In this document: positions 12,742 through 58,155 of the stretch, in pieces
Layout of the letters: each line of letters opens with the position of its first letter
Numbering within the stretch: position 1 is the first letter of the stretch
Notes under the pieces: generated by a model
What the model was told of the DNA's origin: nothing
Database searches by the model: none
What the model saw: only the letters and a program-made list of their open reading frames with translations
Source: Dendrobates tinctorius
Lineage: Eukaryota
DNA: 64,000 nucleotides
Assembly: GCF_039654945.1 (NCBI RefSeq)
Contig: NW_027361819.1
Location: 6,324,001-6,388,000 of the forward strand
Direction of reading: 5' to 3'
Position numbers and translations under genes: made by a program

Positions 12742-12869
12742 CTTTCACGATTCTCTGGAGTCATCTCGAAGGATTGGTTCAAAAATTCCTCCAGGTCAAA
12801 GCCCACACCATACCCGGCGCCACTGCCTTTAGGGGTAACAGAGAAAACAGGGGGCAACATGTCTTCCAC
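12742..12869 (-). CDS. mapk7: mapk7 coding exon 5
   Basis: TTGCAG| acceptor, AG|GTGATG donor, 128 nt; VEDMLPPVFSVTPKGSGAGYGVGFDLEEFLNQSF is a conserved ERK5 motif. Confidence 0.93.
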
Positions 12870-12959
12870 CTGCAAAATAAACAAGTGAGTAATCAGGTAT
12901 AAAGGGTTTAATGAATGAGGGAAGGACAGCACAATGGGGGACGGCAGCGCCGGTCTGAC

Positions 12960-13888: not shown

Positions 13889-13942
13889 CTGCAGAAGAAA
13901 GAGGATATCATTACACAGCGGTACAGAGCGGCAACGCAACTA

Positions 13943-16962
<3,020 letters not shown>

Positions 16963-31955: not shown

Positions 31956-34900
31956 TGATGAGTACCAGAGATATGAGGGGTATCGGTGATAGGAGGGGCA
32001 GAACGATGAGTACCAGAGATATGAGGGGAATCGGTGATAGGAGGGGCAGAGCGATGAGTACCAGAGATATGAGGGGTATCGGTGATAGGAGGGGCAGAAC
32101 AATGAGTACCAGAGAGATGAGAGGTATCGGTGATAGGAGGGGCAGAGCGATGAGTACCAGAGATATGAGGGGTATCGGTGATAGGAGGGGCAGAACGATG
32201 AGTACCAGAGAGATGAGAGGTATCGGTGATAGGAGGGGCAGAACGATGAGTACCAGAGATATGAGGGGTATCGGTGATAGGAGGGGCAGAACGATGAGTA
32301 CCAGAGATATGAGGGGTATCGGTGATAGGAGGGGCAGAACGATGAGTATCAGAGATATGAGGGGTATCGGTGATAGGAGGAGCAGAACGAAGAGTACCAG
32401 AGATATGAGGGGTATCGGTGATAGGAGGAGCAGAACGATGAGTACCAGAGATATGAGGGGTATCGGTGATAGGAGGGGCAGAACGATGAGTACCAGAGAT
32501 ATGAGGGGTATCGGTGATAGGAGGGGCAGAACGATGAGTACCAGAGATATGAGGGGTATCGGTGATAGGAGGGGCAGAACGATGAGTACCAGAGATATGA
32601 GGGGTATCGGTGATAGGAGGGGCAGAACGATGAGTACCAGAGATATGAGGGGTATCGGTGATAGGAGGGGCAGAACGATGAGTACCAGAGATATGAGGGG
32701 TATCGGTGATAGGAGGGGCAGAACGATGAGTACCAGAGAGATGAGGGGTATCGGTGATAGGAGGGGCAGAACGATGAGTACCAGAGAGATGAGGGGTATC
32801 GGTGATAGGAGGGGCAGAACGATGAGTACCAGAGATATGAGGGGTATCGGTGATAGGAGGGGCAGAACGATGAGTATCAGAGATATGAGGGGTATCGGTG
32901 ATAGGAAGGGCAGAACGATGAGTACCAGAGATATGAGGGTTATCGGTGATAGGAGGGGCAGAACGATGAGAACCAGAGATATGAGGGGTATCGGTGATAG
33001 GAGGAGCAGAACGATGAGTACCAGAGATATGAGGGGTATCGGTGATAGGAGGGGCAGAACGATGAGTATCAGAGATATGAGGGGTATCGGTGACAGGAGG
33101 GGCAGAACGATGAGTACCAGAGATATGAGGGGTATCGGTGATAGGAGGGGCAGAACGATAAATACCAGAGATATGAGGGGTATCTGTGATAAGAGGGGCA
33201 GAACGATGAGCACCAGAGGGATGAGGGGTATCGGTAATAGGAGGGGCAGAACGATGAGTACCAGAGATATGAGGGGTATCGGTGATAGGAGGGGCAGAAC
33301 GATGAGCATCAGAGATATGAGGGTTATCAGTGATAGGAGGGGCAGAACGATGAGTACCAGAGATATGAGGGGTATCGGTGATAGGAGGGGCAGAACGATG
33401 AGTACCAGAGATATGAGGGGTATCGGTGATAGGAGGGGCAGAACGATGAGCACCAGCGATATGAGGGGTATCGGTGATAGGAGGAGCAGAACGATGAGCA
33501 CCAGAGATATGAGGGGTATCGGTGATAGGAGGGGCAGAACGATGAGCACCAGAGATATGAGGGGTATCGGTGATAGGAAGGGCAGAACGATGAGTACCAG
33601 AGATAGGAGGGGTATCGGTGACAGGAGGGGCAGAACGATGAGTACCAGAGATATGAGGGGTATCGGTGATAGGAGGAGCAGAACGATGAGTACCAGAGAT
33701 ATGAGGGGTATCGGTGATAGGAGAAGCAGAACGATGAGTACCAGAGATATGAGGGGTATCGGTGATAGGAGGAGCAGAACGATGAGTACCAGAGATATGA
33801 GGGGTATCGGTGATAGGAGGAGCAGAACGATGAGTACCAGAGATATGAGGGGTATCGGTGATAGGAGGGGCAGAACGATGAGCACCAGAGATATGAGGGG
33901 TATCGGTGATAGGAGGAGCAGAACGATGAGCACCAGAGATATGAGGGGTATCGGTGATAGGAGGGGCAGAACGATGAGTACCAGAGATATGAGGGGTATC
34001 GGTGATAGGAGGGGTAGAACGATGACTACCAGAGATATGAGGGGTATCGGTGATAGGAGGGGCAGAACGATGAGTACCAGAGATATGAGGGGTATCGGTG
34101 ATAGGAGAGGCAGAACGATGAGCACCAGAGATATGAGGGGTATCGTGATAGGAGGAGCAGAACGATGAGCACCAGAGATATGAGGGGTATCGGTGATAGG
34201 AGGGGCAGAACGATGAGTACCAGAGATATGAGGGGTATCGGTGATAGGAGGAGCAGAACGATGAGCACCAGAGATATGAGGGGTATCGGTGATAGGAGGG
34301 GCAGAACGATGAGTACCAGAGATATGAGGGGTATCGGTGATAGGAGGGGTAGAACGATGACTACCAGAGATATGAGGGGTATCGGTGATAGGAGGGGCAG
34401 AACGATGAGTACCAGAGATATGAGGGGTATCGGTGATAGGAGAGGCAGAACGATGAGTACCAGAGATATGAGGGGTATCGGTGATAGGAGGGGCAGAGCG
34501 ATGAGTACCAGAGATATGAGGGGTATCGGTGATAGTAGGGGCAGAACGATGAGTACCAGAGAGATGAGAGGTATCGGTGATAGGAGGGGCAGAACGATGA
34601 GTACCAGAGATATGAGGGGTATCGGTGATAGGAGGGGCAGAACGATGAGTACCAGAGATATGAGGGGTATCGGTGATAGGAGGGGTAGAACGATGACTAC
34701 CAGAGATATGAGGGGTATCGGTGATAGGAGGGGCAGAACGATGAGTACCAGAGATATGAGGGGTATCGGTGATAGGAGAGGCAGAACGATGAGTACCAGA
34801 GATATGAGGGGTATCGGTGATAGGAGGGGCAGAGCGATGAGTACCAGAGATATGAGGGGTATCGGTGATAGGAAGGGCAGAACGATGAGTACCAGAGAGA

Positions 34901-37900
34901 TGAGAGGTATCGGTGATAGGAGGGGCAGAACGATGAGTACCAGAGATATGAGGGGTATCGGTGATAGGAGGGGCAGAACGATGAGTACCAGAGATATGAG
35001 GGGTATCGGTGATAGGAGGGGCAGAACGATGAGTATCAGAGATATGAGGGGTATCAGTGATAGGAGGAGCAGAACGATGAGTACCAGAGAAATGAGGGGT
35101 ATCGGTGATAGGAGGAGCAGAACGATGAGTACCAGAGATATGAGGGGTATCGGTGATAGGAGGGGCAGAACGATGAGTACCAGAGATATGAGGGGTATCG
35201 GTGATAGGAGGGGCAGAACGATGAGTACCAGAGATATGAGGGGTATCGGTGATAGGAGGGGCAGAACGATGAGTACCAGAGATATGAGGGGTATCGGTGA
35301 CAGGAGGGGTAGAACGATGACTACCAGAGATATGAGGGGTATCGGTGACAGGAGGAGCAGAACGATGAGTACCAGAGATATGAGGGGTATCGGTGATAGG
35401 AGGAGCAGAACGATGAGTACCAGAGATATGAGGGGTATCGGTGATAGGAGGGGCAGAACGATGAGTACCAGAGATATGAGGGGTATCGGTGATAGGTGGA
35501 GCAGAACGATGTGTATCAGAGATATGAGGGGTATCGGTGATAGGAGGAGCAGAACGATGAGCACCAGAGATATGAGGGGTATCGGTGATAGGAGGGGCAG
35601 AACGATGAGTACCAGAGATATGAGGGGTATCGGTGATAGGAGGAGCAGAACGATGAGCACCAGAGATATGAGGGGTATCGGTGATAGGAGGAGCAGAACG
35701 ATGAGTACCAGAGATATGAGGGGTATCGGTGACAGGAGGGGCAGAACGATGAGTACCAGAGATATGAGGGGTATCGGTGATAGGAGGGGCAGAACGATGA
35801 GTACCAGAGATATGAGGGGTATCGGTGATAGGAGGGGCAGAACGATGAGTACCAGAGATATGAGGGGTATCGGTGATAGGAGGAGCAGAACGATGAGTAC
35901 CAGAGATATGAGGGGTATCGGTGATAGGAGGAGCAGAACGATGAGTACCAGAGATATGAGGGGTATCGGTGATAGGAGGGGCAGAACGATGAGTATCAGA
36001 GATATGAGGGGTATCGGTGATAGGAGGAGCAGAACGATGAGTACCAGAGATATGAGGGGTATCGGTGACAGGAGGGGCAGAACGATGAGTACCAGAGATA
36101 TGAGGGGTATCGGTGATAGGAGGGGCAGAACGATGAGTATCAGAGATATGAGGGGTATCGGTGATAGGAGGGGCAGAACGATGAGTACCAGAGATATGAG
36201 GGGTATCGGTGATAGGAGGAGCAGAACGATGAGTACCAGAGATATGAGGGGTATCGGTGATAGGAGGGGCAGAACGATGAGTACCAGAGATATGAGGGGT
36301 ATCGGTGACAGGAGGGGCAGAACGATGAGTACCAGAGATATGAGGGGTATCGGTGATAGGAGGGGCAGAACGATGAGTACCAGAGATATGAGGGGTATCG
36401 GTGATAGGAGGAGCAGAACGATGAGTACCAGAGATATGAGGGGTATCGGTGACAGGAGGGGCAGAACGATGAGTACCAGAGATATGAGGGGTATCGGTGA
36501 TAGGAGGGGCAGAACGATGAGTATCAGAGATATGAGGGGTATCGGTGATAGGAGGAGCAGAACGATGAGTACCAGAGATATGAGGGGTATCGGTGATAGG
36601 AGGGGCAGAACGATGAGTACCAGAGATATGAGGGGTATCGGTGACAGGAGGGGCAGAACGATGAGTACCAGAGATATGAGGGGTATCGGTGATAGGAGGG
36701 GCAGAACGATGAGTATCAGAGATATGAGGGGTATCGGTGATAGGAGGGGCAGAACGATGAGTACCAGAGATATGAGGGGTATCGGTGATAGGAGGAGCAG
36801 AACGATGAGTACCAGAGATATGAGGGGTATCGGTGATAGGAGGGGCAGAACGATGAGTACCAGAGATATGAGGGGTATCGGTGACAGGAGGGGCAGAACG
36901 ATGAGTACCAGAGATATGAGGGGTATCGGTGATAGGAGGGGCAGAACGATGAGTACCAGAGATATGAGGGGTATCGGTGATAGGAGGAGCAGAACGATGA
37001 GTACCAGAGATATGAGGGGTATCGGTGACAGGAGGGGCAGAACGATGAGTACCAGAGATATGAGGGGTATCGGTGATAGGAGGAGCAGAACGATGAGTAC
37101 CAGAGATATGAGGGGTATCGGTGATAGGAGGGGCAGAACGATGAGTACCAGAGATATGAGGGGTATCGGTGATAGGAGGGGCAGAACGATGAGTACCAGA
37201 GATATGAGGGGTATCGGTGATAGGAGGAGCAGAACGATGAGTACCAGAGATATGAGGGGTATCGGTGATAGGAGGAGCAGAACGATGAGTACCAGAGATA
37301 TGAGGGGTATCGGTGATAGGAGGAGCAGAACGATGAGTACCAGAGATATGAGGGGTATCGGTGATAGGAGGAGCAGAACGATGAGTACCAGAGATATGAG
37401 GGGTATCGGTGATAGGAGGAGCAGAACGATGAGTACAAGAGATATGAGGGGTATCGGTGATAGGAGGGGCAGAACGATGAGTACCAGAGATATGAGGGGT
37501 ATCGGTGATAGGAGGAGCAGAACGATGAGTACCAGAGATATGAGGGGTATCGGTGATAGGAGGAGCAGAACGATGAGTACCAGAGATATGAGGGGTATCG
37601 GTGATAGGAGGAGCAGAACGATGAGCACCAGAGATATGAGGGGTATCGGTGATAGGAGGGGCAGAACGATGAGTACCAGAGATATGAGGGGTATCGGTGA
37701 TAGGAGGGGCAGAACGATGAGTACCAGAGATATGAGGGGTATCGGTGATAGGAGGGGCAGAACGATGAGTACCAGAGATATGAGGGGTATCGGTGATAGG
37801 AGGAGCAGAACGATGAGTACCAGAGATATGAGGGGTATCGGTGATAGGAGGAGCAGAACGATGAGTACCAGAGATATGAGGGGTATCGGTGATAGGAGGG

Positions 37901-39832
37901 GCAGAACGATGAGTACCAGAGATATGAGGGGTATCGGTGATAGGAGGAGCAGAACGATGAGTACCAGAGATATGAGGGGTATCGGTGATAGGAGGGGCAG
38001 AACGATGAGTATCAGAGATATGAGGGGTATCGGTGATAGGAGGGGCAGAACGATGAGTATCAGAGATATGAGGGGTATCGGTGATAGGAGGAGCAGAACG
38101 ATGAGTACCAGAGATATGAGGGGTATCGGTGATAGGAGGGGCAGAACGATGAGTACCAGAGATATGAGGGGTATCGGTGATAGGAGGGGCAGAACGATGA
38201 GTACCAGAGATATGAGGGGTATCGGTGATAGGAGGGGCAGAACGATGAGTACCAGAGAGATGAGGGGTATCGGTGATAGGAGGGGCAGAACGATGAGTAC
38301 CAGAGATATGAGGGGTATCTGTGATAAGAGGGGCAGAACGATGAGCACCAGAGATATGAGGGGTATCGGTGATAGGAGGGGCAGAACGATGAGTACCAGA
38401 GATATGAGGGGTATCGGTGATAGGAGGAGCAGAACGATGAGTATCAGAGATATGAGGGGTATCGGTGATAGGAGGGGCAGAACGATGAGTACCAGAGATA
38501 TGAGGGGTATCGGTGATAGGAGGAGCAGAACGATGAGTACCAGAGATATGAGGGGTATCGGTGATAGGAGGGGCAGAACGATGAGCATCAGAGATATGAG
38601 GGGTATCGGTGATAGGAGGAGCAGAACGATGAGCATCAGAGATATGAGGGGTATCGGTGATAGGAGGGGCAGAACGATGAGTACCAGAGATATGAGGGGT
38701 ATCGGTGATAGGAGGAGCAGAACGATGAGTACCAGAGATATGAGGGTTATCGGTGATAGGAGGGGCAGAACGATGAGCATCAGAGATATGAGGGGTATCG
38801 GTGATAGGAGGAGCAGAACGATGAGTACCAGAGATATGAGGGGTATCGGTGATAGGAGGAGCAGAACGATGAGTACCAGAGATATGAGGGGTATCGGTGA
38901 TAGGAGGGGCAGAACGATGAGTACCAGAGATATGAGGGGTATCGGTGATAGGAGGAGCAGAACGATGAGTATCAGAGATATGAGGGGTATCGGTGATAGG
39001 AGGGGCAGAACGATGACTACCAGAGATATGAGGGGTATCGGTGATAGGAGGAGCAGAACGATGAGTATCAGAGATATGAGGGGTATCGGTGATAGGAGGA
39101 GCAGAACGATGACTACCAGAGATATGAGGGGTATCGGTGATAGGAGGAGCAGAACGATGAGTATCAGAGATATGAGGGGTATCGGTGATAGGAGGAGCAG
39201 AACGATGACTACCAGAGATATGAGGGGTATCGGTGATAGGAGGAGCAGAACGATGAGTATCAGAGATATGAGGGGTATCGGTGATAGGAGGAGCAGAACG
39301 ATGAGTATCAGAGATATGAGGGGTATCGGTGATAGGAGGAGCAGAACGATGAGCACCAGAGATATGAGGGGTATCGGTGATAGGAGGAGCAGAACGATGA
39401 GTATCAGAGATATGAGGGGTATTGGTGATAGGAGGAGCAGAACGATGAGTATCAGAGATATGAGGGGTATCGGTGATAGGAGGAGCAGAACGATGAGTAC
39501 CAGAGATATGAGGGGTATCGGTGATAGGAGGGGCAGAACGATGAGCACCAGAGATATGAGGGGTATCGGTGATAGGAGGGGCAGAATGATGAGTATCAGA
39601 GATATGAGGGGTATCGGTGATAGGAGGGGCAGAACGATGAGCACCAGAGATATGAGGGGTATCGGTGATAGGAGGGGCAGAATGATGAGTATCAGAGATA
39701 TCTTTCTTCTTCTTTATTTTTTTTTATATAGCGCTAACATATTCCGCAGCGCTTTACAGTTTGCACACATTTCATCACTGTCCCCGGTGGGGTTCACAAT
39801 CTGAATTCCCTATCAGTATGTCTTTGGAGTGT

Positions 39833-39863
<31 letters not shown>

Positions 39864-42800
39864 ACGCAAACACGGGGAGAACATACAAACTCCTTGCAGA
39901 TGTTGTCCTTGGTGGGATTCGAACCCAGGACCCCAGCAGCGCTGCAAGGCTGCAGCGCTAACCACTGAGCCACCGTGCTGCCCGAGATATGAGGGGTATC
40001 GGTGATAGGAGGGGCAGAACGATGAGCACCAGAGATATGAGGGGTATCGGTGATAGGAGGAGCAGAACGATGAGTATCAGAGATATGAGGGGTATCGGTG
40101 ATAGGAGAGGCAGAACGATGAGTACCAGAGATATGAGGGGTATCGGTGATAGGAGGAGCAGAACGATGAGTATCAGAGATATGAGGGGTATCGGTGATAG
40201 GAGGGGCAGAACGATGAGTACCAGAGATATGAGGGGTATCGGTGATAGGAGGGGCAGAACGATGAGCACCAGAGATATGAGGGGTATCGGTGATAGGAGG
40301 AGCAGAACGATGAGTATCAGAGATATGAGGGGTATCGGTGATAGGAGAGGCAGAACGATGAGTACCAGAGATATGAGGGGTATCGGTGATAGGAGGAGCA
40401 GAACGATGAGTACCAGAGATATGAGGGGTATCGGTGATAGGAGGAGCAGAACGATGAGTACCAGAGAGATGAGGGGTATCGGTGATAGGAGGAGCAGAAC
40501 GATGAGTACCAGAGATATGAGGGGTATCGGTGATAGGAGGAGCAGAACGATGAGTACCAGAGATATGAGGGGTATCGGTGATAGGAGGGGCAGAACGATG
40601 AGTACCAGAGATATGAGGGGTATCGGTGATAGGAGGGGCAGAACGATGAGTACCAGAGATATGAGGGGTATCGGTGATAGGAGGAGCAGAACGATGAGTA
40701 CCAGAGATATGAGGGGTATCGGTGATAGGAGGGGCAGAAAGATGAGTACCAGAGATATGAGGGGTATCGGTGATAGGAGGAGCAGAACGATGAGTACCAG
40801 AGATATGAGGGGTATCGGTGATAGGAGGAGCAGAACGATGAGTACCAGAGATATGAGGGGTATCGGTGATAGGAGGAGCAGAACGATGAGTACCAGAGAT
40901 ATGAGGGGTATCGGTGATAGGAGGAGCAGAACGATGAGTACCAGAGATATGAGGGGTATCGGTGATAGGAGGAGCAGAACGATGAGTACCAGAGATATGA
41001 GGGGTATCGGTGATAGGAGGAGCAGAACGATGAGTACCAGAGATATGAGGGGTATCGGTGATAGGAGGAGCAGAACGATGAGTATCAGAGATATGAGGGG
41101 TATCGGTGATAGGAGGGGCAGAACGATGAGTATCAGAGATATGAGGGGTATCGGTGATAGGAGGGGCAGAACGATGAGCACCAGAGATATGAGGGGTATC
41201 GGTGATAGGAGGAGCAGAACGATGAGTATCAGAGATATGAGGGGTATCGGTGATAGGAGAGGCAGAACGATGAGTACCAGAGATATGAGGGGTATCGGTG
41301 ATAGGAGGAGCAGAACGATGAGTACCAGAGATATGAGGGGTATCGGTGATAGGAGGAGCAGAACGATGAGTACCAGAGAGATGAGGGGTATCGGTGATAG
41401 GAGGAGCAGAACGATGAGTACCAGAGATATGAGGGGTATCGGTGATAGGAGGAGCAGAACGATGAGTACCAGAGATATGAGGGGTATCGGTGATAGGAGG
41501 AGCAGAACGATGAGTACCAGAGATATGAGGGGTATCGGTGATAGGAGGAGCAGAACGATGAGTACCAGAGATATGAGGGGTATCGGTGATAGGAGGAGCA
41601 GAACGATGAGTACCAGAGATATGAGGGGTATCGGTGATAGGAGGAGCAGAACGATGAGCACCAGAGATATGAGGGGTATCGGTGATAGGAGGGGCAGAAC
41701 GATGAGCACCAGAGATATGAGGGGTATCGGTGATAGGAGGAGCAGAACGATGAGTACCAGAGATATGAGGGGTATCGGTGATAGGAGGGGCAGAACGATG
41801 AGCACCAGAGATATGAGGGGTATCGGTGATAGGAGGGGCAGAATGATGAGTATCAGAGATATGAGGGGTATCGGTGATAGGAGGGGCAGAACGATGAGTA
41901 CCAGAGATATGAGGGGTATCGGTGATAGGAGGGGCAGAATGATGAGTATCAGAGATATGAGGGGTATCGGTGATAGGAGCAGAACGATGAGTACCAGAGA
42001 TATGAGGGGTATCGGTGATAGGAGGGGCAGAACGATGACTACCAGAGATATGAGGGGTATCGGTGATAGGAGGGGCAGAACGATGAGTACCAGAGATATG
42101 AGGGGTATCGGTGATAGGAGGAGCAGAACGATGAGTACCAGAGATATGAGGGGTATCGGTGATAGGAGGGGCAGAACGATGAGTACCAGAGATATGAGGG
42201 GTATCGGTGATAGGAGGAGCAGAACGATGAGTATCAGAGATATGAGGGGTATCGGTGATAGGAGGGGCAGAACGATGAGTACCAGAGATATGAGGGGTAT
42301 CGGTGATAGGAGGGGCAGAACGATGAGTACCAGAGATATGAGGGGTATCGGTGATAGGAGGAGCAGAACGATGAGTACCAGAGATATGAGGGGTATCGGT
42401 GATAGGAGGAGCAGAACGATGAGTACCAGAGATATGAGGGGTATCGGTGATAGGAGGAGCAGAACGATGAATACCAGAGATATGAGGGGTATCGGTGATA
42501 GGAGGAGCAGAACGATGAGTACCAGAGATATGAGGGGTATCGGTGACAGGAGGAGCAGAACGATGAGTACCAGAGATATGAGGGGTATCGGTGATAGGAG
42601 GAGCAGAACGATGAATACCAGAGATATGAGGGGTATCGGTGATAGGAGGAGCAGAACGATGAGTACCAGAGATATGAGGGGTATCGGTGATAGGAGGAGC
42701 AGAACGATGAGTACCAGAGATATGAGGGGTATCGGTGATAGGAGGAGCAGAACGATGAGTACCAGAGATATGAGGGGTATCGGTGACAGGAGGAGCAGAA

Positions 42801-44755
42801 CGATGAGTACCAGAGATATGAGGGGTATCGGTGATAGGAGGAGCAGAACGATGAGTACCAGAGATATGAGGGGTATCGGTGATAGGAGGAGCAGAACGAT
42901 GAGTACCAGAGATATGAGGGGTATCGGTGATAGGAGGAGCAGAACGATGAATACCAGAGATATGAGGGGTATCGGTGATAGGAGGAGCAGAACGATGAGC
43001 ATCAGAGATATGAGGGGTATCGGTGATAGGAGGGGCAGAACGATGAGTACCAGAGATATGAGGGGTATCGGTGATAGGAGGGGCAGAACGATGAGTACCA
43101 GAGATATGAGGGGTATCGGTGATAGGAGGGGCAGAACGATGAGTACCAGAGATATGAGGGGTATCGGTGATAGGAGGAGCAGAACGATGAGTACCAGAGA
43201 TATGAGGGGTATCGGTGATAGGAGGGGCAGAACGATGAGTACCAGAGATATGAGGGGTATCGGTGATAGGAGGAGCAGAACGATGAGTACCAGAGATATG
43301 AGGGGTATCGGTGATAGGAGGGGCAGAACGATGAGTACCAGAGATATGAGGGGTATCGGTGATAGGAGGAGCAGAACGATGAGTACCAGAGATATGAGGG
43401 GTATCGGTGACAGGAGGAGCAGAACGATGAGTACCAGAGATATGAGGGGTATCGGTGATAGGAGGAGCAGAACGATGAGTACCAGAGATATGAGGGGTAT
43501 CGGTGATAGGAGGAGCAGAACGATGAGTACCAGAGATATGAGGGGTATCGGTGATAGGAGGAGCAGAACGATGAGTACCAGAGATATGAGGGGTATCGGT
43601 GATAGGAGGGGCAGAACGATGAGTACCAGAGATATGAGGGGTATCGGTGATAGGAGGGGCAGAACGATGAGTACCAGAGATATGAGGGGTATCGGTGATA
43701 GGAGGAGCAGAACGATGAGCATCAGAGATATGAGGGGTATCGGTGATAGGAGGAGCAGAACGATGAGTACCAGAGATATGAGGGGTATCGGTGATAGGAG
43801 GGGCAGAACGATGAGTACCAGAGATATGAGGGGTATCGGTGATAGGAGGAGCAGAACGATGAGTACCAGAGATATGAGGGGTATCGGTGATAGGAGGAGC
43901 AGAACGATGAGTACCAGAGATATGAGGGGTATCGGTGATAGGAGGGGCAGAACGATGAGTACCAGAGATATGAGGGGTATCGGTGATAGGAGGAGCAGAA
44001 CGATGAGCACCAGAGATATGAGGGGTATCGGTGATAGGAGGGGCAGAACGATGAATACCAGAGATATGAGGGGTATCGGTGATAGGAGGGGCAGAACGAT
44101 GAGTACCAGAGATATGAGGGTTATCAGTGATAGGAGGGGCAGAACGATGAGTACCAGAGATATGAGGGGTATCGGTGATAGGAGGGGCAGAACGATGAGT
44201 ACCAGAGATATGAGGGGTATCGGTGATAGGAGGGGCAGAACGATGAGTACCAGAGATATGAGGGTTATCAGTGATAGGAGGGGCAGAACGATGAGTACCA
44301 GAGATATGAGGGGTATCAGTGATAGGAGGGGCAGAACGATGAGTACCAGAGATATGAGGGGTATCAGTGATAGGAGGGGCAGAACGATGAGTACCAGAGA
44401 TATGAGGGGTATCGGTGATAGGAGGGGCAGAACGATGAGTACCAGAGATATGAGGGGTATCGGTGATAGGAGGGGCAGAACGATGAGTACCAGAGATATG
44501 AGGGGTATCGGTGATAGGAGGGGCAGAACGATGAGTACCAGAGATATGAGGGGTATCGGTGATAGGAGGGGCAGAACGATGAGTACAAGAGATATGAGGG
44601 GTATCGGTGATAGGAGGGGCAGAACGATGAGTACAAGAGATATGAGGGGTATCGGTGATAGGAGGGGCAGAACGATGAGTACCAGAGATATGAGGGGTAT
44701 CGGTGATAGGAGGGGCAGAACGATGAGTACCAGAGATATGAGGGGTATCGGTGAC
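31956..44755. repeat. 48-bp satellite array, 12.8 kb, about 260 copies
   Basis: Unit GATGAGTACCAGAGATATGAGGGGTATCGGTGATAGGAGG(G/A)GCAGAAC; interrupted once by a SINE. Confidence 0.98.
39702..39983 (-). mobile_element. tRNA-derived V-SINE with L2-like tail and 7-bp TSD
   Basis: Minus strand: A box TGGCTCAGTGG, B box GGTTCGAATCC, V-domain core GGAGTTTGTATGTTCTCCCCGTGTTTGCGTGGGTTTCCTCCGGG; TSD GAGATAT at 39695-39701 and 39984-39990. Confidence 0.92.
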
Positions 44756-46241: not shown

Positions 46242-46586
46242 ATGGCCACCACTCCTAGCCCGCTGCCCCTGTTGCCCTCGCTGAGCTGCGCCGTGTGCCG
46301 GGATGTGCCCCGGGAGCCGGTCACCATGTCCTGCGGGCACTGCCTCTGCCGGGGCTGCCTGGAGCAGGCATGGAGGGGCCAGGAGACCTACCCGACCTGC
46401 CCCAAATGCCGGCCCACCCCGGTGCAGGCCCCGGACGGGGTACAGAGGGGGCTGTGCGCGGAGCATGGCGAGAAGGTGCAGCTGTACTCCACGCAGGACG
46501 GAAGGTTACTGTGCCCGCGCTGCCAGGGGGCCGCCGAGCCACCTCACGCCATGATCCCCATACAGGAGGCCGTGGGGGGCTACAAG
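46242..46586 (+). CDS. TRIM E3 ligase (RING/B-box/coiled-coil/B30.2) coding exon 1
   Basis: GCCATGG Kozak context; C3HC4 RING (CAVC..CGHCLCRGC..CPKC); degenerate B-box; donor AAG|GTGAGG. An upstream coding exon cannot be excluded. Confidence 0.85.
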
Positions 46587-46659: not shown

Positions 46660-46755
46660 GATGAGCTGATGTCGGCCATGGCACCGCTGGAGGCCCGGCT
46701 GAAGGAGCTGCAGCAGATGCAGTGCGCCCAGGAGCAGATGATCGCACAGCACCGG
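46660..46755 (+). CDS. TRIM coding exon 2 (coiled coil)
   Basis: 96-nt phase 0-0 exon, typical of B30.2 TRIMs; DELMSAMAPLEARLKELQQMQCAQEQMIAQHR. Confidence 0.88.
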
Positions 46756-47659
46756 GTATGACAGCGCCATGCTGCTCCCACCCTCGGGGCGGGGTGGAAA
46801 TGGGGGTCACACGGCACAGCCAGGGGTCCAGGCTGTCACGCTTGCTCTGGGCTCCGCTCTCGCAGTGTGGCCTTGTCAGTAGGGGCGACCATAAAGATGC
46901 CACGTGAGGGGGTGACCCACTGAGCGATTCCTCCCTGTGCACTTCTGGCGCCATTTATCCCCCAGGGTACAAAGGCCTGGTCATGGCGGACCCCGAGCGC
47001 CTGTGGGTCAGTGATGGCGGCAACCATACAGCAGGTCATGGGCCACCTCTGCCCCTACTGACTCCTGAGCGACCACCCTGACACCTAGTGATGAGAAGGC
47101 AGGAGACGATGGAGAGCCGGAGGATAGTCCCCTGCTATCCTCCTCCTGCCCTCTCCTCTTGCCCCTGCTCCCATCCTTCCCTTGCCTCTGCTCCGCACCG
47201 GCTATGAAAGTGCCATGCTGCTCCCACCCTCGGGGCGGGGTAGAATAGGGGTCCACGCTGTCACGCTTGCTCTGGGGTCCGCTCTCGTCTACTTTTCGCC
47301 ATTACAGAGCACCGCAGTGTGGCCTTGTCAGTAGGGGCGACCATAGAGATGCCACGTAAGGGGGTCTCCCAATAAGCGATTCCACCCTGTGCACTTCTGG
47401 AGCCATTTATCCCCCAGGGTACAAAGGCCTGGCCATGGCGGACCCCGAGCGCCTGTGGGTTAGTGATGGCAGCCACCGTACAGCAGGTCATTGGCCACCG
47501 CCACCTCTGCCCCTACTGACTCCTGAGCGGCCACCCTGACACCTAGTGATGAGAAGGCAGGAGATGATGTAGAGTCGGAGGATAGTCCCCTGCCCGAGGC
47601 ACCCAGCTTTCCCAGGAGCAGACATCCAGGGGCACTGACTACTCTTCCTTCTCTCACAG

Positions 47660-47893
47660 GGGAACCTCCTCAGCACCAAGCACCATGTGAGTCTGGAGTT
47701 CGAGAAGCTGCACCAGTTCCTGCGGGAGCGAGAGGAGCGGCTGCTGCGGGAGCTGCAACAGGAGGGGGACCTGATCCTGGCCGAGATGGAGGAAAGTCTC
47801 AGCAAGATGAAGCAGAACTGCCAGGGCATCCTCCAGACAATCAGCAGCACCCAGCCGCGGCTGTACGAGCAGGACGCCGTCACCTTCCTCACC
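47660..47893 (+). CDS. TRIM coding exon 3 (coiled coil)
   Basis: 234 nt, HVSLEFEKLHQFLREREERLLRELQQE...QDAVTFLT; donor ACC|GTGAGT. Confidence 0.9.
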
Positions 47894-48764
47894 GTGAGTA
47901 CCCTGATATCACACTGTGGTCCCTACATGAGCCCAGGACTGGGGGAGCGTCACCTTCCTCACAGTGAGTACCCCGTTATCACGCTGGGGTCCCTACATGA
48001 GCCCAGGACTGGGGGGAGCGTCACCTTCCTCACAGTGAGTACCCCGATATCACACGGGGGGCCCCTACATGAGCCCAGGATTGGGGGAGCAGTCACCTTC
48101 CTCACAGTGAGTACCCCTATATCACACGGGGGTCCCTACATGAGCCCAGGACTGGGGGAGCGTCACCTTCCTCAGTGAGTACCCCTAAATCACACGGGGG
48201 CCCCTACATGGGCCCAGGACTGGGGGAGCAGTCACCTTCCTCACAGTGAGTACCCCTATATCACACGGGGGCCCCTACATGAGCCCAGGACTGGGGGAGC
48301 CGTCACCTTCCTCAGTGAGTACCCCGATATCACACTGGGGTCCCTACATGAGCCCAGGACTGGGGGAGCGTCACCTTCCTCAGTGAGTACCCTGATATCA
48401 CACGGGGGCCCCTACATGAGCCCAGGACTGGGGGAGCCGTCACCTTCCTCAGTGAGTACCCCGATATCACACGGGGCCCCTACATGAGCCCAGGACTGGG
48501 GGAGCCGTCACCTTCCTCAGTGAGTACCCCGATATCACACTGGGGTCCCTACATGAGCCCAGGACTGGGGGAGCGTCACCTTCCTCAGTGAGTACCCTGA
48601 TATCACACGGGGGCCCCTACATGAGCCCAGGACTGGGGGAGCCGTCACCTTCCTCAGTGAGTACCCCGATATCACACGGGGCCCCTACATGAGCCCAGGA
48701 CTGGGGGAGCCGTCACCTTCCTCAGTGAGTACCCCGATATCACACGGGGCCCCTACATGAGCCC
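47876..48764. repeat. About 68-72-bp tandem repeat (13 copies) containing the exon end and 5' splice site
   Basis: Unit GTCACCTTCCTCA(CA)GTGAGTACCCCGATATCACACGGGGCCCCTACATGAGCCCAGGACTGGGGGAGC. Confidence 0.95.
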
Positions 48765-48843: not shown

Positions 48844-49046
48844 GACAACACTTCAGAAATTCGTCCGACGAAGTAGATAAAAGTAAAAGATCTTTACCGA
48901 AAATCCATAAAACCACAAACCGGTTCAGGTGAAACTGACGTCTTCTAGAAGATTCCTGAACCGGTTTGTGGTTTTATGGATTTTCGGTAAAGATCTTTTA
49001 CTTTTATCTTCTTTGTTCGGACGGGACGGATTTCTGAAATTTTGTC
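48844..49046. repeat. Fold-back hairpin (MITE-like) in TRIM intron 3
   Basis: Perfect 55-bp arms 48875-48929 and 48955-49009 with a 25-nt loop, extended by imperfect outer arms. Confidence 0.85.
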
Positions 49047-49994: not shown

Positions 49995-50017
49995 GATATA
50001 AAGTCGTGTATGGACAT
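49995..50017 (+). CDS. TRIM coding exon 4 (23-nt microexon)
   Basis: TTGCAG|GATATAAAGTCGTGTATGGACAT|GTGAGT; a 23-nt exon is characteristic of this TRIM class and the phases fit. Confidence 0.85.
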
Positions 50018-50099: not shown

Positions 50100-50230
50100 A
50101 TGTTATGGGGGCTACAGGGATGGGTTCCCGGCACAGAATGTGGTGGCTCCCAGAGACTTTGGCTACGGAGGAGTGAAGGACCTGATCCAATATACGGCCT
50201 GGAAGGATATGAAGTCTTATATCAGCCCCG
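50100..50230 (+). CDS. TRIM coding exon 5
   Basis: 131 nt, ...GGVKDLIQYTAWKDMKSYISP; CAG| acceptor, G|GTGAGC donor. Confidence 0.87.
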
Positions 50231-50293
50231 GTGAGCAGACCCCTAGGATGGCGACTCTACAGTGCCCACAACATAACCCCCCCCATACACCCA

Positions 50294-50828
50294 TGTATTG
50301 TATACAGGACCCCCCTGGTATGTGTGTGCCCCCACAGACCTGATGTATACAGGACCTCCCTGGTATGTGTGTGTGTGTGTGCCCCCACAGACCTCTGATG
50401 TATACAGGACCCCCCTGGTATGTGTGTGTGCCCCCCACAGACCTCTGATGTGTACAGGACCCCCCTGGTATGTGTGTGTGTGTGTGCCCCCCACAGACCT
50501 CTGATGTATACAGGACCCCCCTGGTATGTGTGTGTGTGCCCCCCACAGACCTCTGATGTATACAGGACCCCCCTGGTATGTGTGTGTGTGCCCCCACAGA
50601 CCTCTGATGTATACAGGACCCCCCTGGTATGTGTGTGTGCCCCCACAGACCTCTGATGTATACAGGACCCCCCTGGTATGTGTGTGTGTGCCCCCACAGA
50701 CCTCTGATGTATACAGGACCCCCCTGGTATGTGTGTGTGTGCCCCCACAGACCTCTGATGTATACAGGACCCCCCTGGTATGTGTGTGTGTGCCCCCACA
50801 GACCTCTGATGTATACAGTGCCTCCCTG

Positions 50829-50866
<38 letters not shown>

Positions 50867-52212
50867 CCCCCACAGACCTCTGATGTATACAGAACCCCCC
50901 GGTATGTGTGTGTGCCCCCACAGACCTGATGTATACAGTGCCTCCCTGGTATGTGTGTGTGCGTGCCCCCCACAGACCTGATGTATACAGGACCCCCCGG
51001 TATGTGTGTGTGCCCCCACAGACCTCTGATGTATACAGGACCCCCCTGGTATGTGTGTGTGCCCCCACAGACCTGATGTATACAGGACCCCCCCCTGGTA
51101 TGTGTGTGTGCCCCCACAGACCTGATGTATACAGGACCCCCCCTGGTATGTGTGTGTGTGTGTGTGCCCCCCACAGACCTGATGTATACAGGACCCCCCC
51201 TGGTATGTGTGTGTGCCCCCACAGACCTGATGTATACAGGACCCACCTGGTGTGTGTGTGTTTGCCCCCCACAGACCTGATGTATACAGGACCCCCCCTG
51301 GTATGTGTGTGTGCCCCCACAGACCTGATGTATACAGGACCCACCTGGTGTGTGTGTGTGTGCCCCCACAGACCTGATGTATACAGGACCCCCCCCTGGT
51401 ATGTGTGTGTGCCCCCACAGACCTGATGTATACAGGACCCCCCCTGGTATGTGTGTGTGTGTGTGTGCCCCCCACAGACCTGATGTATACAGGACCCCCC
51501 CTGGTATGTGTGTGTGCCCCCACAGACCTGATGTATACAGGACCCACCTGGTGTGTGTGTGTGTGCCCCCCACAGACCTGATGTATACAGGACCCCCCCT
51601 GGTATGTGTGTGTGCCCCCACAGACCTGATGTATACAGGACCCCCCCAGTATGTGTGTGCCCCCACAGACCTCTGATGTATACAGGACCCCCCTGGTATG
51701 TGTGTGTGTGCCCCCCACAGACCTGATGTATACAGGACCCCCCTGGTATGTGTGTGTGTGCCCCCCACAGACCTGATGTATACAGGACCCCCCTGGTATG
51801 TGTGTGTGTGCCCCCCACAGACCTGATGTATACAGGACCTCCCTGGTATGTGTGTGTGCCCCCCACAGACATCTGATGTATACAGGACCCCCCTGGTATG
51901 TGTGCCCCCCACAGACATCTGATGTATACAGGACCCCCCTGGTATGTGTGTGTGTGTGTGCCCCCACAGACCTGATGTATACAGGACCTCCCTGGTATGT
52001 GTGTGTGCCCCCCACAGACATCTGATGTATACAGGACCCCCCTGGTATGTGTGTGTGTGCCCCCCACAGACATCTGATGTATACAGGACCCCCCTGGTAT
52101 GTGTGTGTGTGTGCCCCCACAGACCTGATGTATACAGGACCTCCCTGGTATGTGTGTGTGCCCCCCACAGACCTCTGATGTATACAGGACCCCCCGGTAT
52201 GTGTGTGCCCCC
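50294..52212. repeat. About 50-bp minisatellite with variable internal (TG)n and C runs, TRIM intron 5
   Basis: Unit ACAGACCT(CT)GATGTATACAGGACCCCCCTGGTATGTGTGTGTGCCCCC. Confidence 0.95.
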
Positions 52213-52275: not shown

Positions 52276-52820
52276 CCTTACCGGACATCATCATGGACCC
52301 CAGCACGGCTCACCTGAACCTGGTGCTGTCTGAGGACCTGACCAGCGTACGATACAGCGACACCAAGCAGTCGTTACCAGAGAACCCACGGCGCTTCGAC
52401 TACTGCTGCTGCGTCCTGGGCACCGAGGGCTTCACCTCTGGCCGCCATTACTGGGCTGTCGACGTCGGCAGCAAGACCAAGTGGAATCTTGGCGTGGCCA
52501 AAGAGTCGGTGAACCGCCGGGGCGGGATCACGCTGTCCCCGGAGAACGGCTTCTGGATACTGTGGCTGAGGAACGGCCACGAGTTCAAAGCCCTGGACGT
52601 CCCGTACCGGACGCTGACCCTGAGGAGCAAACCGCAGCGCGTGGGCATTTACCTCGACTACGAGGGCGGCCAGCTGTCCTTCTACAACGCCGACGACATG
52701 TCCCACATCTATACCTTCGTCACCTCCTTCTCCGAGACCATCTACCCCTACTTCTGCCCCTGCCTGAACGACTCGGGGAAGAACGGGGGGCCGCTCAGGG
52801 TCCTTCACCACGTGCCGTGA
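52276..52820 (+). CDS. TRIM last coding exon (PRY-SPRY/B30.2)
   Basis: [61 protein letters not shown]; stop at 52820; AATAAA at 52914. The six exons total 1374 nt (457 aa). Confidence 0.95.
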
Positions 52821-54384: not shown

Positions 54385-57300
54385 TGTCACCCCCCCAGGA
54401 CTTATCTCCATCCACACGTCACCCTCCAAGGACTAATCACCATCCACACGTCACCCCCCCCCAGGACTAATCACCATCCACACGTCACCCCCCCAGGACT
54501 AATCACCATCCACACGTCACCCCCCCCCAGGACTAATCACCATCCACACGTCACCCCCCCCCAGGACTAATCACCATCCACACGTCACCCCCCCAGGACT
54601 AATCACCATCCACACGTCACCCCCCCAGGACTAATCACCATCCACACGTCACCCCCCCCAGGACTTATCACCATCCACACGTCACCCCCCCCAGGACTAA
54701 TCACCATCCACACGTCACCCCCCCCCCAGGACTAATCACCATCCACACGTCACCCCCCCCAGGACTAGTCACCATCCACACGTCACCCCCCCCAGGACTA
54801 ATCACCATCCACACGTCACCCCCCCCCAGGACTAATCACCATCCACACGTCACCCCCCCCCCCCAGGACTAATCACCATCCACACGTCACCCCCCCCAGG
54901 ACTAATCACCATCCACACGTCACCCCCCCAGGACTAATCACCATCCACACGTCACCCCCCCAGGACTAATCACCATCCACACGTCACCCCCCCAGGACTA
55001 ATCACCATCCACACGTCACCCCCCCAGGACTAATCACCATCCACACGTCACCCCCCCAGGACTAATCACCATCCACACGTCACCCCCCCCAGGACTTATC
55101 ACCATCCACACGTCACCCCCCCAGGACTAATCACCATCCACACGTCACCCCCCCCAGGACTTATCTCCATCCACACGTCACCCTCCAAGGACTAATCACC
55201 ATCCACACGTCACCCCCCCCCCCAGGACTAATCACCATCCACACGTCACCCCCCCAGGACTAATCACCATCCACACGTCACCCCCCCAGGACTAATCACC
55301 ATCCACACGTCACCCCCCCCAGGACTTATCACCATCCACACGTCACCCCCCCCAGGACTTATCACCATCCACACGTCACCCCCCCAGGACTAATCACCAT
55401 CCACACGTCACCCCCCCCAGGACTAATCATCCACACGTCACCCCCCCCAGGACTAATCACCATCCACACGTCACCCCCCCCAGGACTAATCACCATCCAC
55501 ACGTCACCCCCCCCCAGGACTAATCACCATCCACACGTCACCCCCCCAGGACTTATCACCATCCACACGTCACCCCCCCAGGACTAATCACCATCCACAC
55601 GTCACCCTCCCAGGACTAATCACCATCCACACGTCACCCCCCAGGACTAATCACCATCCACACGTCACCCTCCCAGGAATAATCACCATCCACACGTCAC
55701 CCCCCCCAGGACTAATCACCATCCACACGTCACCCCCCCCCAGGACTAATCACCATCCACACGTCACCCTCCCAGGAATAATCACCATCCACACGTCACC
55801 CCCCCAGGAATAATCACCATCCACACGTCACCCCCCCCAGGAATAATCACCATCGACACATCACCCCCTCAGGACTAATCACCGTCCACACCAGCCCCCA
55901 TGTCACCCCCCAGGACTAATCACCATCCACACGTCACCCCCCCAGGACTAATCACCATCCACACATCACCCCCCCAGGAATAATCACCATCCACACATCA
56001 CCCCCCCAGGAATAATCACCATCCACACATCACCCCCCCAGGAATAATCACCATCCACACATCACCCCCCCAGGAATAATCACCATCCACACATCACCCC
56101 CCCAGGAATAATCACCATCCACACATCACCCCCCCAGGACTAATCACTATCCACACATCACCCCCCCAGGAATAATCACCATCCACACATCACCCCCCCA
56201 GGAATAATCACCATCCACACATCACCCCCCCAGGAATAATCACCATCCACACATCACCCCCCCAGGAATAATCACCATCCACACATCACCCCCTCAGGAC
56301 TAATCACCGTCCACACCAGCCCGTCCCCCCCCAGGACTAATCACCGTCCACACCAGCCCGTCCCCCCCAGGACTAATCACCGTCCACACCAGCCCGTCAC
56401 CCGCAGGACTAGTCACCGTCCACACCAGTCCGTCACCCCCCAGGACTAATGTCCGTCCACACCAGCCCATCACCCCCCCAGGACTAATCTCCATCCATAC
56501 CAACCCGTCACCCGCAGGACTAATCACCGTCCACACCAGCCCGTCACCCCCCAGGACTAATCACCGTCCACACCAGCCCGTCAGCCCCAGGACTAATCAC
56601 CATCCACATGTCACCCCCCCAGGAATAATCACCATCGACACATCACCCCCTCAGGACTAATCACCGTCCACACCAGCCCCCATGTCACCCCCCAGGACTA
56701 ATCACCATCCACACGTCACCCTCCCAGGACTAATCACCATCCACACATCACCCCCCCAGGAATAATCACCATCCACACATCACCCCCCCAGGAATAATCA
56801 CCATCCACACATCACCCCCCCAGGACTAATCACTATCCACACATCACCCCCCCAGGACTAATCACCATCCACACATCACCCCCCCAGGAATAATCACCAT
56901 CCACACATCACCCCCCCAGGAATAATCACCATCCACACATCACCCCCCCAGGAATAATCACCATCGACACATCACCCCCTCAGGACTAATCACCGTCCAC
57001 ACCAGCCCCCATGTCACCCCCCAGGACTAATCACCATCCACACGTCACCCCCCCAGGACTAATCACCATCCACACATCACCCCCCCAGGAATAATCACCA
57101 TCCACACATCACCCCCCCAGGAATAATCACCATCCACACATCAACCCCCAGGAATAATCACCATCCACACATCACCCCCCCAGGAATAATCACCATCCAC
57201 ACATCACCCCCCCAGGAATAATCACTATCCACACATCACCCCCCCAGGAATAATCACCATCCACACATCACCCCCCCAGGAATAATCACCATCCACACAT

Positions 57301-58155
57301 CACCCCCTCAGGACTAATCACCGTCCACACCAGCCCGTCCCCCCCCAGGACTAATCACCGTCCACACCAGCCCGTCCCCCCCAGGACTAATCACCGTCCA
57401 CACCAGCCCGTCACCCGCAGGACTAGTCACCGTCCACACCAGTCCGTCACCCCCCAGGACTAATCTCCGTCCACACCAGCCCATCACCCCCCCAGGACTA
57501 ATCTCCATCCATACCAACCCGTCACCCGCAGGACTAATCACCGTCCACACCAGCCCGTCACCCCCCAGGACTAATCACCGTCCACACCAGCCCGTCAGCC
57601 CCAGGACTAATCACCGTCCACACCAGCTTGTCACCCCCCAGGACTAATCACCGTCCACACCAGCCCGTCCCCCCCCAGGACTAATCACCGTCCACACCAG
57701 CCCGTCACCCGCAGGACTAGTCACCGTCCACACCAGCCCGTCACCCCCCAGGACTAATCACCGTCCACACCAGCCCGTCAGCCCCAGGACTAATCACCGT
57801 CCACACCAGCCCGTCACCCGCAGGACTAGTCACCGTCCACACCAGCCCGTCACCCCCCAGGACTAATCACCGTCCACACCAGCCCGTCAGCCCCAGGACT
57901 AATCACCGTCCACACCAGCTCGTCACCCCCCAGGACTAATCACCGTCCACACCAGCTCGTCACCCCCCAGGACTAATCACTGTCCACAGCAGCCCATCAC
58001 CCCCCAGGACTAATCACCGTCCACACCAGCCCATCACCCCCCACGACTAATCACCGTCCACACCAGCCCGTCACCCCCCAGGACTAATCACCGTCCACAC
58101 CAGCCCGTCTCACGTCACCCCCCAGGAATACTCACCGTCCACACCAGCCCGTCAC
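54385..58155. repeat. About 31-38-bp minisatellite (over 100 copies) derived from the mfap4-like exon 3/intron 3 junction
   Basis: Units CAGGACTAATCACCGTCCACACCAGCCCGTCACCCCC near the exon and CAGGACTAATCACCATCCACACGTCACCCCCC further away. Confidence 0.95.

What the first reader, a model, noticed from the sequence alone, without database searches (positions are those of the whole stretch)
47876..48764. Tandem array of 13 intact 5' splice sites amplified from a TRIM exon end; two alternatives keep the reading frame
Seen: the repeat unit is the last ~15 nt of exon 3 plus the donor and proximal intron. GTGAGT occurs at the presumed true donor (47894) and in 12 copies out to 48725, all with similar context. 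The donors at 48035 (+141 nt) and 48107 (+213 nt) are in frame with no stop (ORF open to 48178), so they would add 47 or 71 aa after the coiled coil. The others shift frame or hit a stop. Inference: repeat copy number could tune isoform length or nonsense-mediated decay of this E3 ligase.
Basis: partly seen in the sequence, partly recalled or inferred. Interest (0 to 1): 0.72.

Follow-up and report, generated by a model that had tools for sequence, protein, structure and literature searches.

The report
Splice-donor minisatellite in frog TRIM69
Intron 3 of a frog TRIM69-type ubiquitin-ligase gene begins with 13 tandem copies of its own exon/intron junction; this is a repeat type already described in human genes and in amphioxus, where normally only the first splice site is used, though here the same junction is also repeated in two distantly related frogs.

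Summary
Window 47876-48764 is a 68-72 bp minisatellite (12.8 copies, 93% alike). Its first unit spans the end of the 234-nt coiled-coil exon and its donor, so GTGAGT occurs 13 times.

The gene is the intact frog orthologue of TRIM69 / zinc-binding protein A33. The first donor is the one that matches the conserved exon 3/exon 4 junction.

This is a known kind of repeat: junction-spanning minisatellites in human F7, LMNB2, PDGFA, IFI6 and CBS, and amphioxus "mirages". With monomers of 37-100 bp, only the first donor is used. This scan already reported the same thing on other DNA of this genome (GALNT16, SURF2). I confirmed two more cases in this window: the mfap4-like intron, and intron 2 of this same gene.

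The idea that copy number tunes isoforms or mRNA decay remains speculation.

New here: the TRIM69 orthologues of Xenopus laevis (46-bp unit, at least 7 copies) and Ascaphus truei also repeat this same junction. The array is therefore either very old or keeps re-forming at this spot.

The parts
46242..46586 (+). Exon 1 coding part: RING finger plus a variant B-box
   Evidence: Pfam RING hits at E 4.5e-8, and a B-box hit below cutoff. 77-92% identical to exon 1 products of three other frogs, including the Ser at a B-box ligand position. Donor AAG|GTGAGG at 46587.
46660..46755 (+). Exon 2, 96 nt, coiled coil
   Evidence: AG/GT borders. 28 of 32 residues identical to Ascaphus P0001, 100% to L003 and 94% to X. 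laevis.
46744..47640 (+). Intron 2: two tandem units of about 450 bp. The first starts 12 nt inside exon 2. The junction copy in the second unit (47190) has its donor destroyed (GT>CT).
   Evidence: the repeat finder families D1-D4, spacing 425-458 nt, 85-96% identity. D3 aligns the unit starting at 46744 (CACCGG|GTATGA) with the one at 47190 (CACCGG|CTATGA).
47660..47893 (+). Exon 3, 234 nt, phase 0, coiled coil, ending ...AVTFLT
   Evidence: Reading of the sequence. TRIM_CC Pfam hit. 93% identical to Ascaphus exon 3. dN 0.038, dS 0.91 over exons 2-3.
47894..47899 (+). Authentic 5' splice site, ACC|GTGAGT
   Evidence: It is the first donor, and only it (or +141 / +213) joins the 23-nt exon 4 in frame. 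The junction FLT|DIKSCMD matches primate TRIM69 FLK|DITSFLD in P0037.
47876..48764 (+). Junction-spanning minisatellite: 12.8 units of 68-72 bp
   Evidence: TRF; unit alignment; pairwise differences 0-9 per unit, with units 7-9 identical to 10-12.
47964..48730 (+). Twelve pseudo-donors (GTGAGT), each overlapped by an acceptor-like pyrimidine tract plus CAG
   Evidence: Predicted U1 pairing is the same as at the authentic site (-7.1 vs -7.2 kcal/mol). Approximate PWM scores are 5.3-6.8 bits against 5.2 for the authentic site.
48176..48178 (+). First in-frame stop (TGA) of the read-through frame
   Evidence: Any donor downstream of it would give a premature stop inside the extended exon.
48868..49016 (.). 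Foldback element (MITE-like) in the unique part of intron 3
   Evidence: Inverted repeat with 62-nt arms, 97% complementary, 25-nt spacer.
49995..50017 (+). Exon 4, 23 nt (DIKSCMD..)
   Evidence: Pyrimidine tract + CAG before it and GTGAGT after it. 19 of 23 nt match X. laevis exon 4 at L002 16162-16184.
50100..50230 (+). Exon 5, 131 nt
   Evidence: AG/GT borders. 93% identical to X. laevis and matches Staurois P0002.
50279..52207 (+). Intron 5 minisatellite (about 50-bp unit). It fills most of the intron and does not span a junction.
   Evidence: TRF.
52276..52820 (+). Exon 6: PRY/SPRY (B30.2) domain and stop codon
   Evidence: Pfam PRY 9e-21 and SPRY 5.8e-24. 93% identical to Staurois parvus, 72% to Ambystoma A33-like, 57-60% to mammalian TRIM69.

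Best explanation
This is a junction-spanning minisatellite of the F7-IVS7 / amphioxus 'mirage' type, in intron 3 of the frog orthologue of TRIM69 (zinc-binding protein A33). A tandem duplication that included the last ~18-24 nt of exon 3, the donor and ~40 nt of intron was expanded by unequal exchange or slippage to 13 units. The latest step was a 205-bp (3-unit) duplication. The first unit carries the authentic donor, which splices to the conserved 23-nt exon 4. The 12 downstream copies are intronic pseudo-donors that are removed with the intron. They stay silent, or nearly so, because the spliceosome commits to the first site that emerges next to the defined exon. The array is mainly a tolerated by-product of a region that generates minisatellites at a very high rate. 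Shown here: the anatomy, the origin from the junction, the gene identity, the frame consequences, and recurrence in two other frogs. Inferred: that the pseudo-donors are silent.
For: Array and unit structure. Canonical intact TRIM gene model whose frame closes only through the first donor or the +141/+213 sites. The exon 3/4 junction is conserved with a primate TRIM69, exon 4 is conserved in X. laevis, and purifying selection is strong (dN/dS about 0.04). Literature: in F7 (37 bp), LMNB2 (100 bp) and PDGFA (81 bp) only the most upstream of identical donors is used, and F7 pseudo-sites with higher consensus values still do not compete (PMC1557585). Amphioxus mirages do not disturb splicing (PMC3087553). 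The pseudo-donors here are at most 1.6 bits better than the authentic site on an approximate PWM and pair with U1 identically. 59% of the window is minisatellite. Two further junction-spanning repeats lie in the same window: intron 2 of this gene with a dead pseudo-donor, and the mfap4-like intron with weakened GTGATT copies. This shows the process is frequent and that pseudo-donors are free to decay. In-frame positions occur at the chance rate.
Against: There are no transcript data for this locus, so silence of the pseudo-donors rests on analogy. All 13 hexamers are intact: 0 of 6 hexamer columns vary against 30 of 68 elsewhere (P = 0.04). The same junction is also reiterated in X. laevis and Ascaphus, which is more than a purely neutral passenger model would predict. 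In other experimental systems, strong duplicated donors favour the site nearest the acceptor (my own knowledge, not checked here).
Confidence: 0.7

Rival explanations
1. Several pseudo-donors are used, giving in-frame +47 and +71 aa isoforms and frame-shifted transcripts that are degraded. Array length would then tune isoform ratio or TRIM69 output.
For: The pseudo-donors are intact and intrinsically as good as or slightly better than the authentic site. +141 and +213 are open and in frame. In IFI6 and CBS the two nearest pseudo-sites are used constitutively (PMC1557585).
Against: IFI6 and CBS have short monomers (CBS 31 bp; IFI6 12 nt by my own recollection), whereas arrays with 37-100 bp monomers use only the first site. 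Unit lengths of 68-72 nt show no multiple-of-3 constraint, and in-frame sites are at chance frequency. The inserted peptides would be translated intron repeat. The gene is under strong purifying selection. No transcript evidence.
Confidence: 0.13
2. The array is a selected element: a cluster of U1 snRNP binding sites kept in frog TRIM69 intron 3 for over 200 million years. It might reinforce the weak authentic donor (C at -1), help splicing to the 23-nt micro-exon, or suppress premature cleavage and polyadenylation.
For: The same junction is reiterated in three frogs that span the deepest anuran splits, with intact GTGAGT/GTAAGT in all visible copies: 13 of 13 here and 7 of 7 in X. laevis. The X. 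laevis and window units share the same exon-side boundary (about -24) and a similar proximal intron. In X. laevis the array ends only about 100 nt before exon 4. The donor hexamer is invariant within the array.
Against: Period, copy sequence and, in Ascaphus, the exon-side boundary (-44/-46) all differ, so there is no conserved unit. Concerted evolution seeded from the constrained first unit would keep donors intact without selection. Other class-IV TRIM genes splice the same 23-nt exon without such arrays (my own knowledge). The locus sits in an extremely minisatellite-rich and, in X. laevis, subtelomeric region, which favours recurrent neutral formation. Sister arrays in the same window have lost their donors.
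Confidence: 0.14
3. It is an assembly artefact: a collapsed or inflated repeat, so the true locus has one junction.
For: Tandem repeats are error-prone in assemblies, and no reads could be laid on the region.
Against: Units differ by 0-9 positions in an ordered pattern, with diverged proximal units and a clean 3-unit higher-order repeat distally. Independent assemblies of two other frogs show the same kind of repeat at the same junction. Copy number may still be inexact.
Confidence: 0.03

Closest known systems
Human F7 intron 7 (IVS7) 37-bp minisatellite
   Same: The first monomer spans the exon/intron boundary. The authentic donor is followed by identical pseudo-donors. Pseudo-sites are functional in principle but silent, and the most upstream site is chosen (PMC1557585).
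   Different: F7 has 5-9 copies of 37 bp with only 4 exonic nt. Here there are 13 copies of 68-72 bp with 18-24 exonic nt, and the pseudo-sites differ from the authentic one at -1. Polymorphism and splicing are untested here.
Human LMNB2 (100 bp x 10-15) and PDGFA intron 4 (81 bp x 16-18) junction repeats
   Same: Long monomers that reiterate the exon/intron junction and fill much of the intron; only the authentic donor is used (PMC1557585).
   Different: Different genes. No cross-species data were checked here.
Human IFI6 (6-16) and CBS intron 13 (31 bp) minisatellites
   Same: A minisatellite provides multiple donors. [quoted passage not shown]
   Different: Their monomers are short, and the used sites lie very near the authentic donor. 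In IFI6 the 12-nt period (from memory) keeps the frame. Here the period is 68-72 nt and not a multiple of 3.
Amphioxus 'mirages' (Adh3, globin genes)
   Same: Minisatellite-like tandem duplications of exon-intron boundaries that are frequent genome-wide, unstable in length, evolve in concert, do not interfere with normal splicing, and occur at Adh3 in two species (PMC3087553).
   Different: A cephalochordate rather than a frog. Both 5' and 3' exon boundaries are involved there.
Same-genome cases noted by this scan (GALNT16, SURF2, mfap4-like)
   Same: Arrays of an intron's own exon/donor junction in the same frog genome. Earlier agents reported that only the first donor appears in assembled transcripts. 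I confirmed the mfap4-like anatomy myself.
   Different: In the mfap4-like array the copies carry a weakened donor (GTGATT); in TRIM69 all copies are intact. I did not re-test the transcript claims for GALNT16 and SURF2.

Membership tests
Junction-spanning minisatellite (F7-IVS7 type / 'mirage') | Head-to-tail tandem array of a 10-160 bp unit | tested here: met
   TRF: period 68, 12.8 copies, 93% matches.
Junction-spanning minisatellite (F7-IVS7 type / 'mirage') | The first monomer spans the exon-intron boundary of a real exon | tested here: met
   The array starts at 47876-47878, and exon 3 ends at 47893. The exon is supported by Pfam, orthologues and frame.
Junction-spanning minisatellite (F7-IVS7 type / 'mirage') | The donor consensus is reiterated in the intron copies | tested here: met
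   12 further GTGAGT with the same +1 to +8 sequence.
Junction-spanning minisatellite (F7-IVS7 type / 'mirage') | Normal splicing uses the most upstream (authentic) donor | not testable with these tools
There is only indirect support from frame and orthologue junctions.
Junction-spanning minisatellite (F7-IVS7 type / 'mirage') | Copy-number polymorphism and concerted evolution | tested here: inconclusive
   Concerted evolution and recent turnover are visible (units 7-9 = 10-12). Polymorphism among individuals was not testable.
TRIM69 / zinc-binding protein A33 (class-IV TRIM) | RING, coiled coil and C-terminal PRY/SPRY in that order | tested here: met
   Pfam hits exon by exon.
TRIM69 / zinc-binding protein A33 (class-IV TRIM) | Closest named relatives are TRIM69/A33 rather than other TRIMs | tested here: met
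   The PRY/SPRY exon is 72% identical to Ambystoma A33-like and 57-60% to mammalian TRIM69. TRIM39-like hits are lower. This was tested on the last exon only. The joined protein was not searched, and no tree was built.
TRIM69 / zinc-binding protein A33 (class-IV TRIM) | Canonical B-box 2 zinc ligands | tested here: not met
   The B-box hit is below the Pfam cutoff (20.2 vs 24.1 bits). A Ser replaces a Cys ligand in all four frogs. This looks like a family trait, not decay, and it does not affect the TRIM assignment.

The most novel reading that the evidence does not exclude
The exon 3 junction minisatellite is an ancient feature of anuran TRIM69 (older than the Xenopus-Neobatrachia split, possibly crown Anura). 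It is retained by selection as a multi-U1-site element or as a regulated source of isoforms, and exchange between the array copies and the first unit drives amino-acid change at the end of the coiled-coil exon.
Probability: 0.12. Interest if true: 0.7.

Novelty: new member of a known kind. Interest (0 to 1): 0.36.

Why it matters
On its own this is one more example of a known curiosity and is probably neutral. Its value is as material for experiments. This frog genome seems to carry many such arrays with different periods (32, 68 and about 450 bp in this window alone) and different donor states (intact, weakened, dead). TRIM69 shows the same junction repeated in three frogs with 46-, 68- and about 75-bp units. 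Together with RNA-seq, these would form a natural series for testing how the spliceosome chooses among identical 5' splice sites, and for asking how long a minisatellite anchored on an exon boundary can persist.

Tried and rejected

All searches were exon by exon, by reference.

3. A word search with exon 3 plus its read-through found no database protein carrying the +47/+71 extension. It returned only the Ascaphus partial protein. Because of the length window this is weak negative evidence.

4. DNA for the Staurois parvus locus could not be fetched, and its upstream 217-aa product was not retrieved.

5. I tested whether homology between unit and exon extends upstream of the TRF boundary. A free local alignment is not significant (697 of 2000 shuffles). 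Only the position-specific CAGGAC match with a 7-nt insertion suggests extension to -24.

6. An automatic three-species alignment of the units (MAFFT) is ambiguous. The idea that the Xenopus and window units derive from an Ascaphus-type unit by an 18-nt deletion remains a conjecture.

7. I considered recursive splicing and rejected it. In the copies the AG shares its G with the GT (CAGTGAGT), so use of the AG would not regenerate a donor.

8. MaxEntScan was not available.

9. I did not use the large representative protein search.

10. I did not fill the N stretches of L002, so X. laevis exon 3 itself was not seen.

Full report
OBSERVATION. Tandem Repeats Finder reports a single array at 47876/47878-48764 with a 68-bp period, 12.8 copies, 93% matches and 137- and 205-bp higher-order periods. 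GTGAGT occurs 13 times between 47894 and 48725 at spacings of 70, 71, 72, 68, 71, 69, 68, 69, 68, 68, 69 and 68 nt. Over the whole window the hexamer is not enriched (31 seen, 36 expected), so the cluster is a consequence of the repeat. Units 7-9 are identical to units 10-12, and unit 13 is of the unit 9/12 type. Proximal units differ from each other at 5-9 positions. This is the usual picture of a minisatellite with recent distal turnover and less homogenised edge units.

GENE MODEL. The exons are 46242-46586 (RING plus variant B-box), 46660-46755 (96 nt), 47660-47893 (234 nt, phase 0), 49995-50017 (23 nt), 50100-50230 (131 nt) and 52276-52820 (PRY/SPRY and stop). All have AG/GT borders and a frame that closes at 457 codons. 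This is the canonical class-IV TRIM exon pattern.

The PRY/SPRY exon is 93% identical to a Staurois parvus protein, 72% to axolotl "zinc-binding protein A33-like" and 57-60% to mammalian TRIM69. The gene is therefore the frog TRIM69/A33 orthologue. I searched exon by exon only and left out the joined protein.

Exon 1 is 77-92% identical in three other frogs, including the Ser that replaces a B-box zinc ligand. Exons 2-3 differ from Ascaphus truei with dN 0.038 and dS 0.91. The gene is intact and strongly constrained.

The end of exon 3 and the start of exon 4 (…TFLT|DIKSCMD) correspond to …FDFLK|DITSFLD in a primate TRIM69 (Otolemur P0037). Exon 4 is conserved in Xenopus laevis at 19 of 23 nt. 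This identifies 47893|47894 as the functional donor.

FRAME CONSEQUENCES. Donors at +141 and +213 are in frame and open. The read-through frame stops at 48176-48178, so every donor from 48246 onward gives a premature stop inside the extended exon. The +281 donor runs into a stop in exon 4 (49999). The +70 donor shifts the frame and first meets a stop at 52331 in the last exon, where nonsense-mediated decay would not be expected.

Five of 12 pseudo-donors are in frame by length, which is the chance expectation (P = 0.37). Unit lengths show no multiple-of-3 constraint.

All 13 sites have the same +1 to +8 sequence and the same predicted U1 pairing (-7.1 to -7.2 kcal/mol). The copies are therefore intact and marginally better than the authentic site. 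All 12 copies, but not the authentic site, have A at -1. This makes a pyrimidine tract plus CAG overlap the donor G. Competition between U2AF and U1 there is a possible silencing mechanism, but it is inference only.

WHAT KIND OF THING IT IS. Minisatellites whose first monomer spans an exon-intron boundary are described in the literature. Borensztajn et al. 2006 (PMC1557585) list five human cases:
- F7 IVS7: 37 bp, 5-9 copies, only the most upstream donor used. The pseudo-sites are functional when the upstream ones are mutated, and pseudo-sites with higher consensus values still do not compete.
- LMNB2: 100 bp x 10-15 copies, authentic site only.
- PDGFA: 81 bp x 16-18 copies, authentic site only.
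- IFI6/6-16: 25 pseudo-sites, the two nearest also used.
- CBS: 31 bp, two pseudo-sites also used.

In amphioxus such repeats are called "mirages". They are frequent and unstable in length, evolve in concert, do not disturb splicing, and are present at Adh3 in two species (PMC3087553). With a 68-72 bp monomer, the present array falls in the class where only the first donor is used.

This scan has already reported the same kind of repeat on other DNA of this genome (GALNT16 and SURF2). Earlier agents stated that assembled transcripts use only the first donor; I did not re-test that.

CONTEXT IN THE WINDOW. 59% of the window is minisatellite. I confirmed two more junction-spanning repeats here.

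(i) Intron 2 of the same gene consists of two units of about 450 bp. The first begins 12 nt inside exon 2 (CACCGG|GTATGA), and the second has the donor destroyed (CACCGG|CTATGA).

(ii) On the minus strand, a fibrinogen-domain (mfap4-like) exon ends …GGTGTGGACG|GTGAGT at 58136/58135. It is followed by roughly 110 units of 32 bp, each with …GGTGTGGACG|GTGATT.

So the process is common in this region, and pseudo-donors are free to weaken or die.

ORTHOLOGUES (new here). Ascaphus truei contig L001 holds exon 2, intron 2 and exon 3. Its exon 3 ends …CTTCCTCACG|GTAAGG. Then, 31 nt into the intron, 17 nt identical to the exon's own sequence 44 nt upstream of the donor begin again, and the contig stops there. 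That is a tandem unit of about 75 bp.

Xenopus laevis locus L002 has exons 1, 2, 4, 5 and 6 in order. Exon 3 lies in an N stretch (10694-15740) that I did not try to fill. Directly after that stretch, 15741-16062 is a 46-bp array with at least 7 copies. Its unit reads …GATCCCATCTCCTTCCTTACT|GTAAGT… (DPISFLT plus donor), and it ends about 100 nt before exon 4. The locus lies about 236 kb from the end of a 104.6-Mb chromosome record.

Three frogs spanning the deepest anuran divergences therefore repeat the same junction. Independent chance occurrence at the rate seen elsewhere in this genome is implausible. Either the array is old, or this junction, in a persistently minisatellite-prone region, re-forms arrays repeatedly.

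The Xenopus unit and the window unit appear to share the exon-side boundary (about -24, CC|CA[AG]GA[CT]). They also match at 10 of 15 positions at +7 to +21 of the intron. The window unit equals the Xenopus unit plus insertions of about 17 and 7 nt. This favours common ancestry of those two arrays.

The Ascaphus boundary is at -44/-46. It would fit the same origin only if an 18-nt deletion between two CAG triplets is assumed. The automatic alignment is ambiguous, and my free test for extended homology was not significant.

In each species the copies carry that species' own exon-end codons. Three of the five amino-acid differences to Ascaphus in exon 3 fall in the last six codons, which is the part of the exon inside the repeat unit (P = 0.007). 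This could reflect a relaxed linker or exchange between copies and exon. I could not separate these.

VERDICT. The structure is a new member of a known kind. The most likely reading (0.7) is a tolerated junction minisatellite whose extra donors are spliced out with the intron.

The cross-frog recurrence at one junction is the only feature beyond the ordinary, and it is the reason for a moderate rather than low score.

Noticed in passing
window 46744-47640: Intron 2 of the same gene is two tandem units of about 450 bp. The first starts 12 nt inside exon 2. The junction copy at 47190 has the donor changed from GT to CT.
   Followed up: partly
window 54386-58136 (minus strand): A fibrinogen-domain (mfap4-like) exon ends GGTGTGGACG|GTGAGT at 58136/58135. 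The intron that follows is about 110 copies of a 32-bp unit repeating the junction with a weakened donor, GTGATT.
   Followed up: partly
window 47876-47893 vs L001 1153-1170: Three of the five amino-acid differences to Ascaphus in exon 3 (AVT vs PIN) lie in the last six codons, the part of the exon that belongs to the repeat unit (Fisher P = 0.007). Possibly exchange between array copies and the exon, or just a relaxed linker.
   Followed up: partly
window 48868-49016: Foldback with 62-nt arms, 97% complementary, 25-nt spacer. A MITE-like insertion in the unique part of intron 3.
   Followed up: no
L002 9380-9994 (Xenopus laevis): An array of 23-bp units, each containing CACAG|GTGAGA, runs to within 8 nt of the ATG of TRIM69 exon 1. 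It could be another reiterated splice junction, of a 5'-UTR exon.
   Followed up: no
L001 498-936 (Ascaphus truei): Intron 2 is full of CACCTCTAG|GAC motifs that resemble the acceptor junction of its own exon 2 (AACCTCTAG|GACGAG).
   Followed up: no
window 869-5806 (minus strand): A VKORC1-like first exon (about 5627-5806, minus strand, named from memory of the protein) has its donor GTGAGT at 5626-5621. Its intron then holds a 4.7-kb array of a 31-bp unit (152 copies) whose sequence resembles the first ~20 nt of the intron.
   Followed up: no
window 31957-44754: A 12.8-kb array of a 48-bp unit (267 copies, 94% alike) lies immediately upstream of the TRIM69 gene. Overall 59% of the window is minisatellite, and G+C reaches 74% locally.
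   Followed up: no
window 50279-52207: Intron 5 of TRIM69 is almost entirely a minisatellite of about 50 bp whose unit contains both TG|GTATGT and CCCACAG| motifs. It does not include the exon 5 junction.
   Followed up: no
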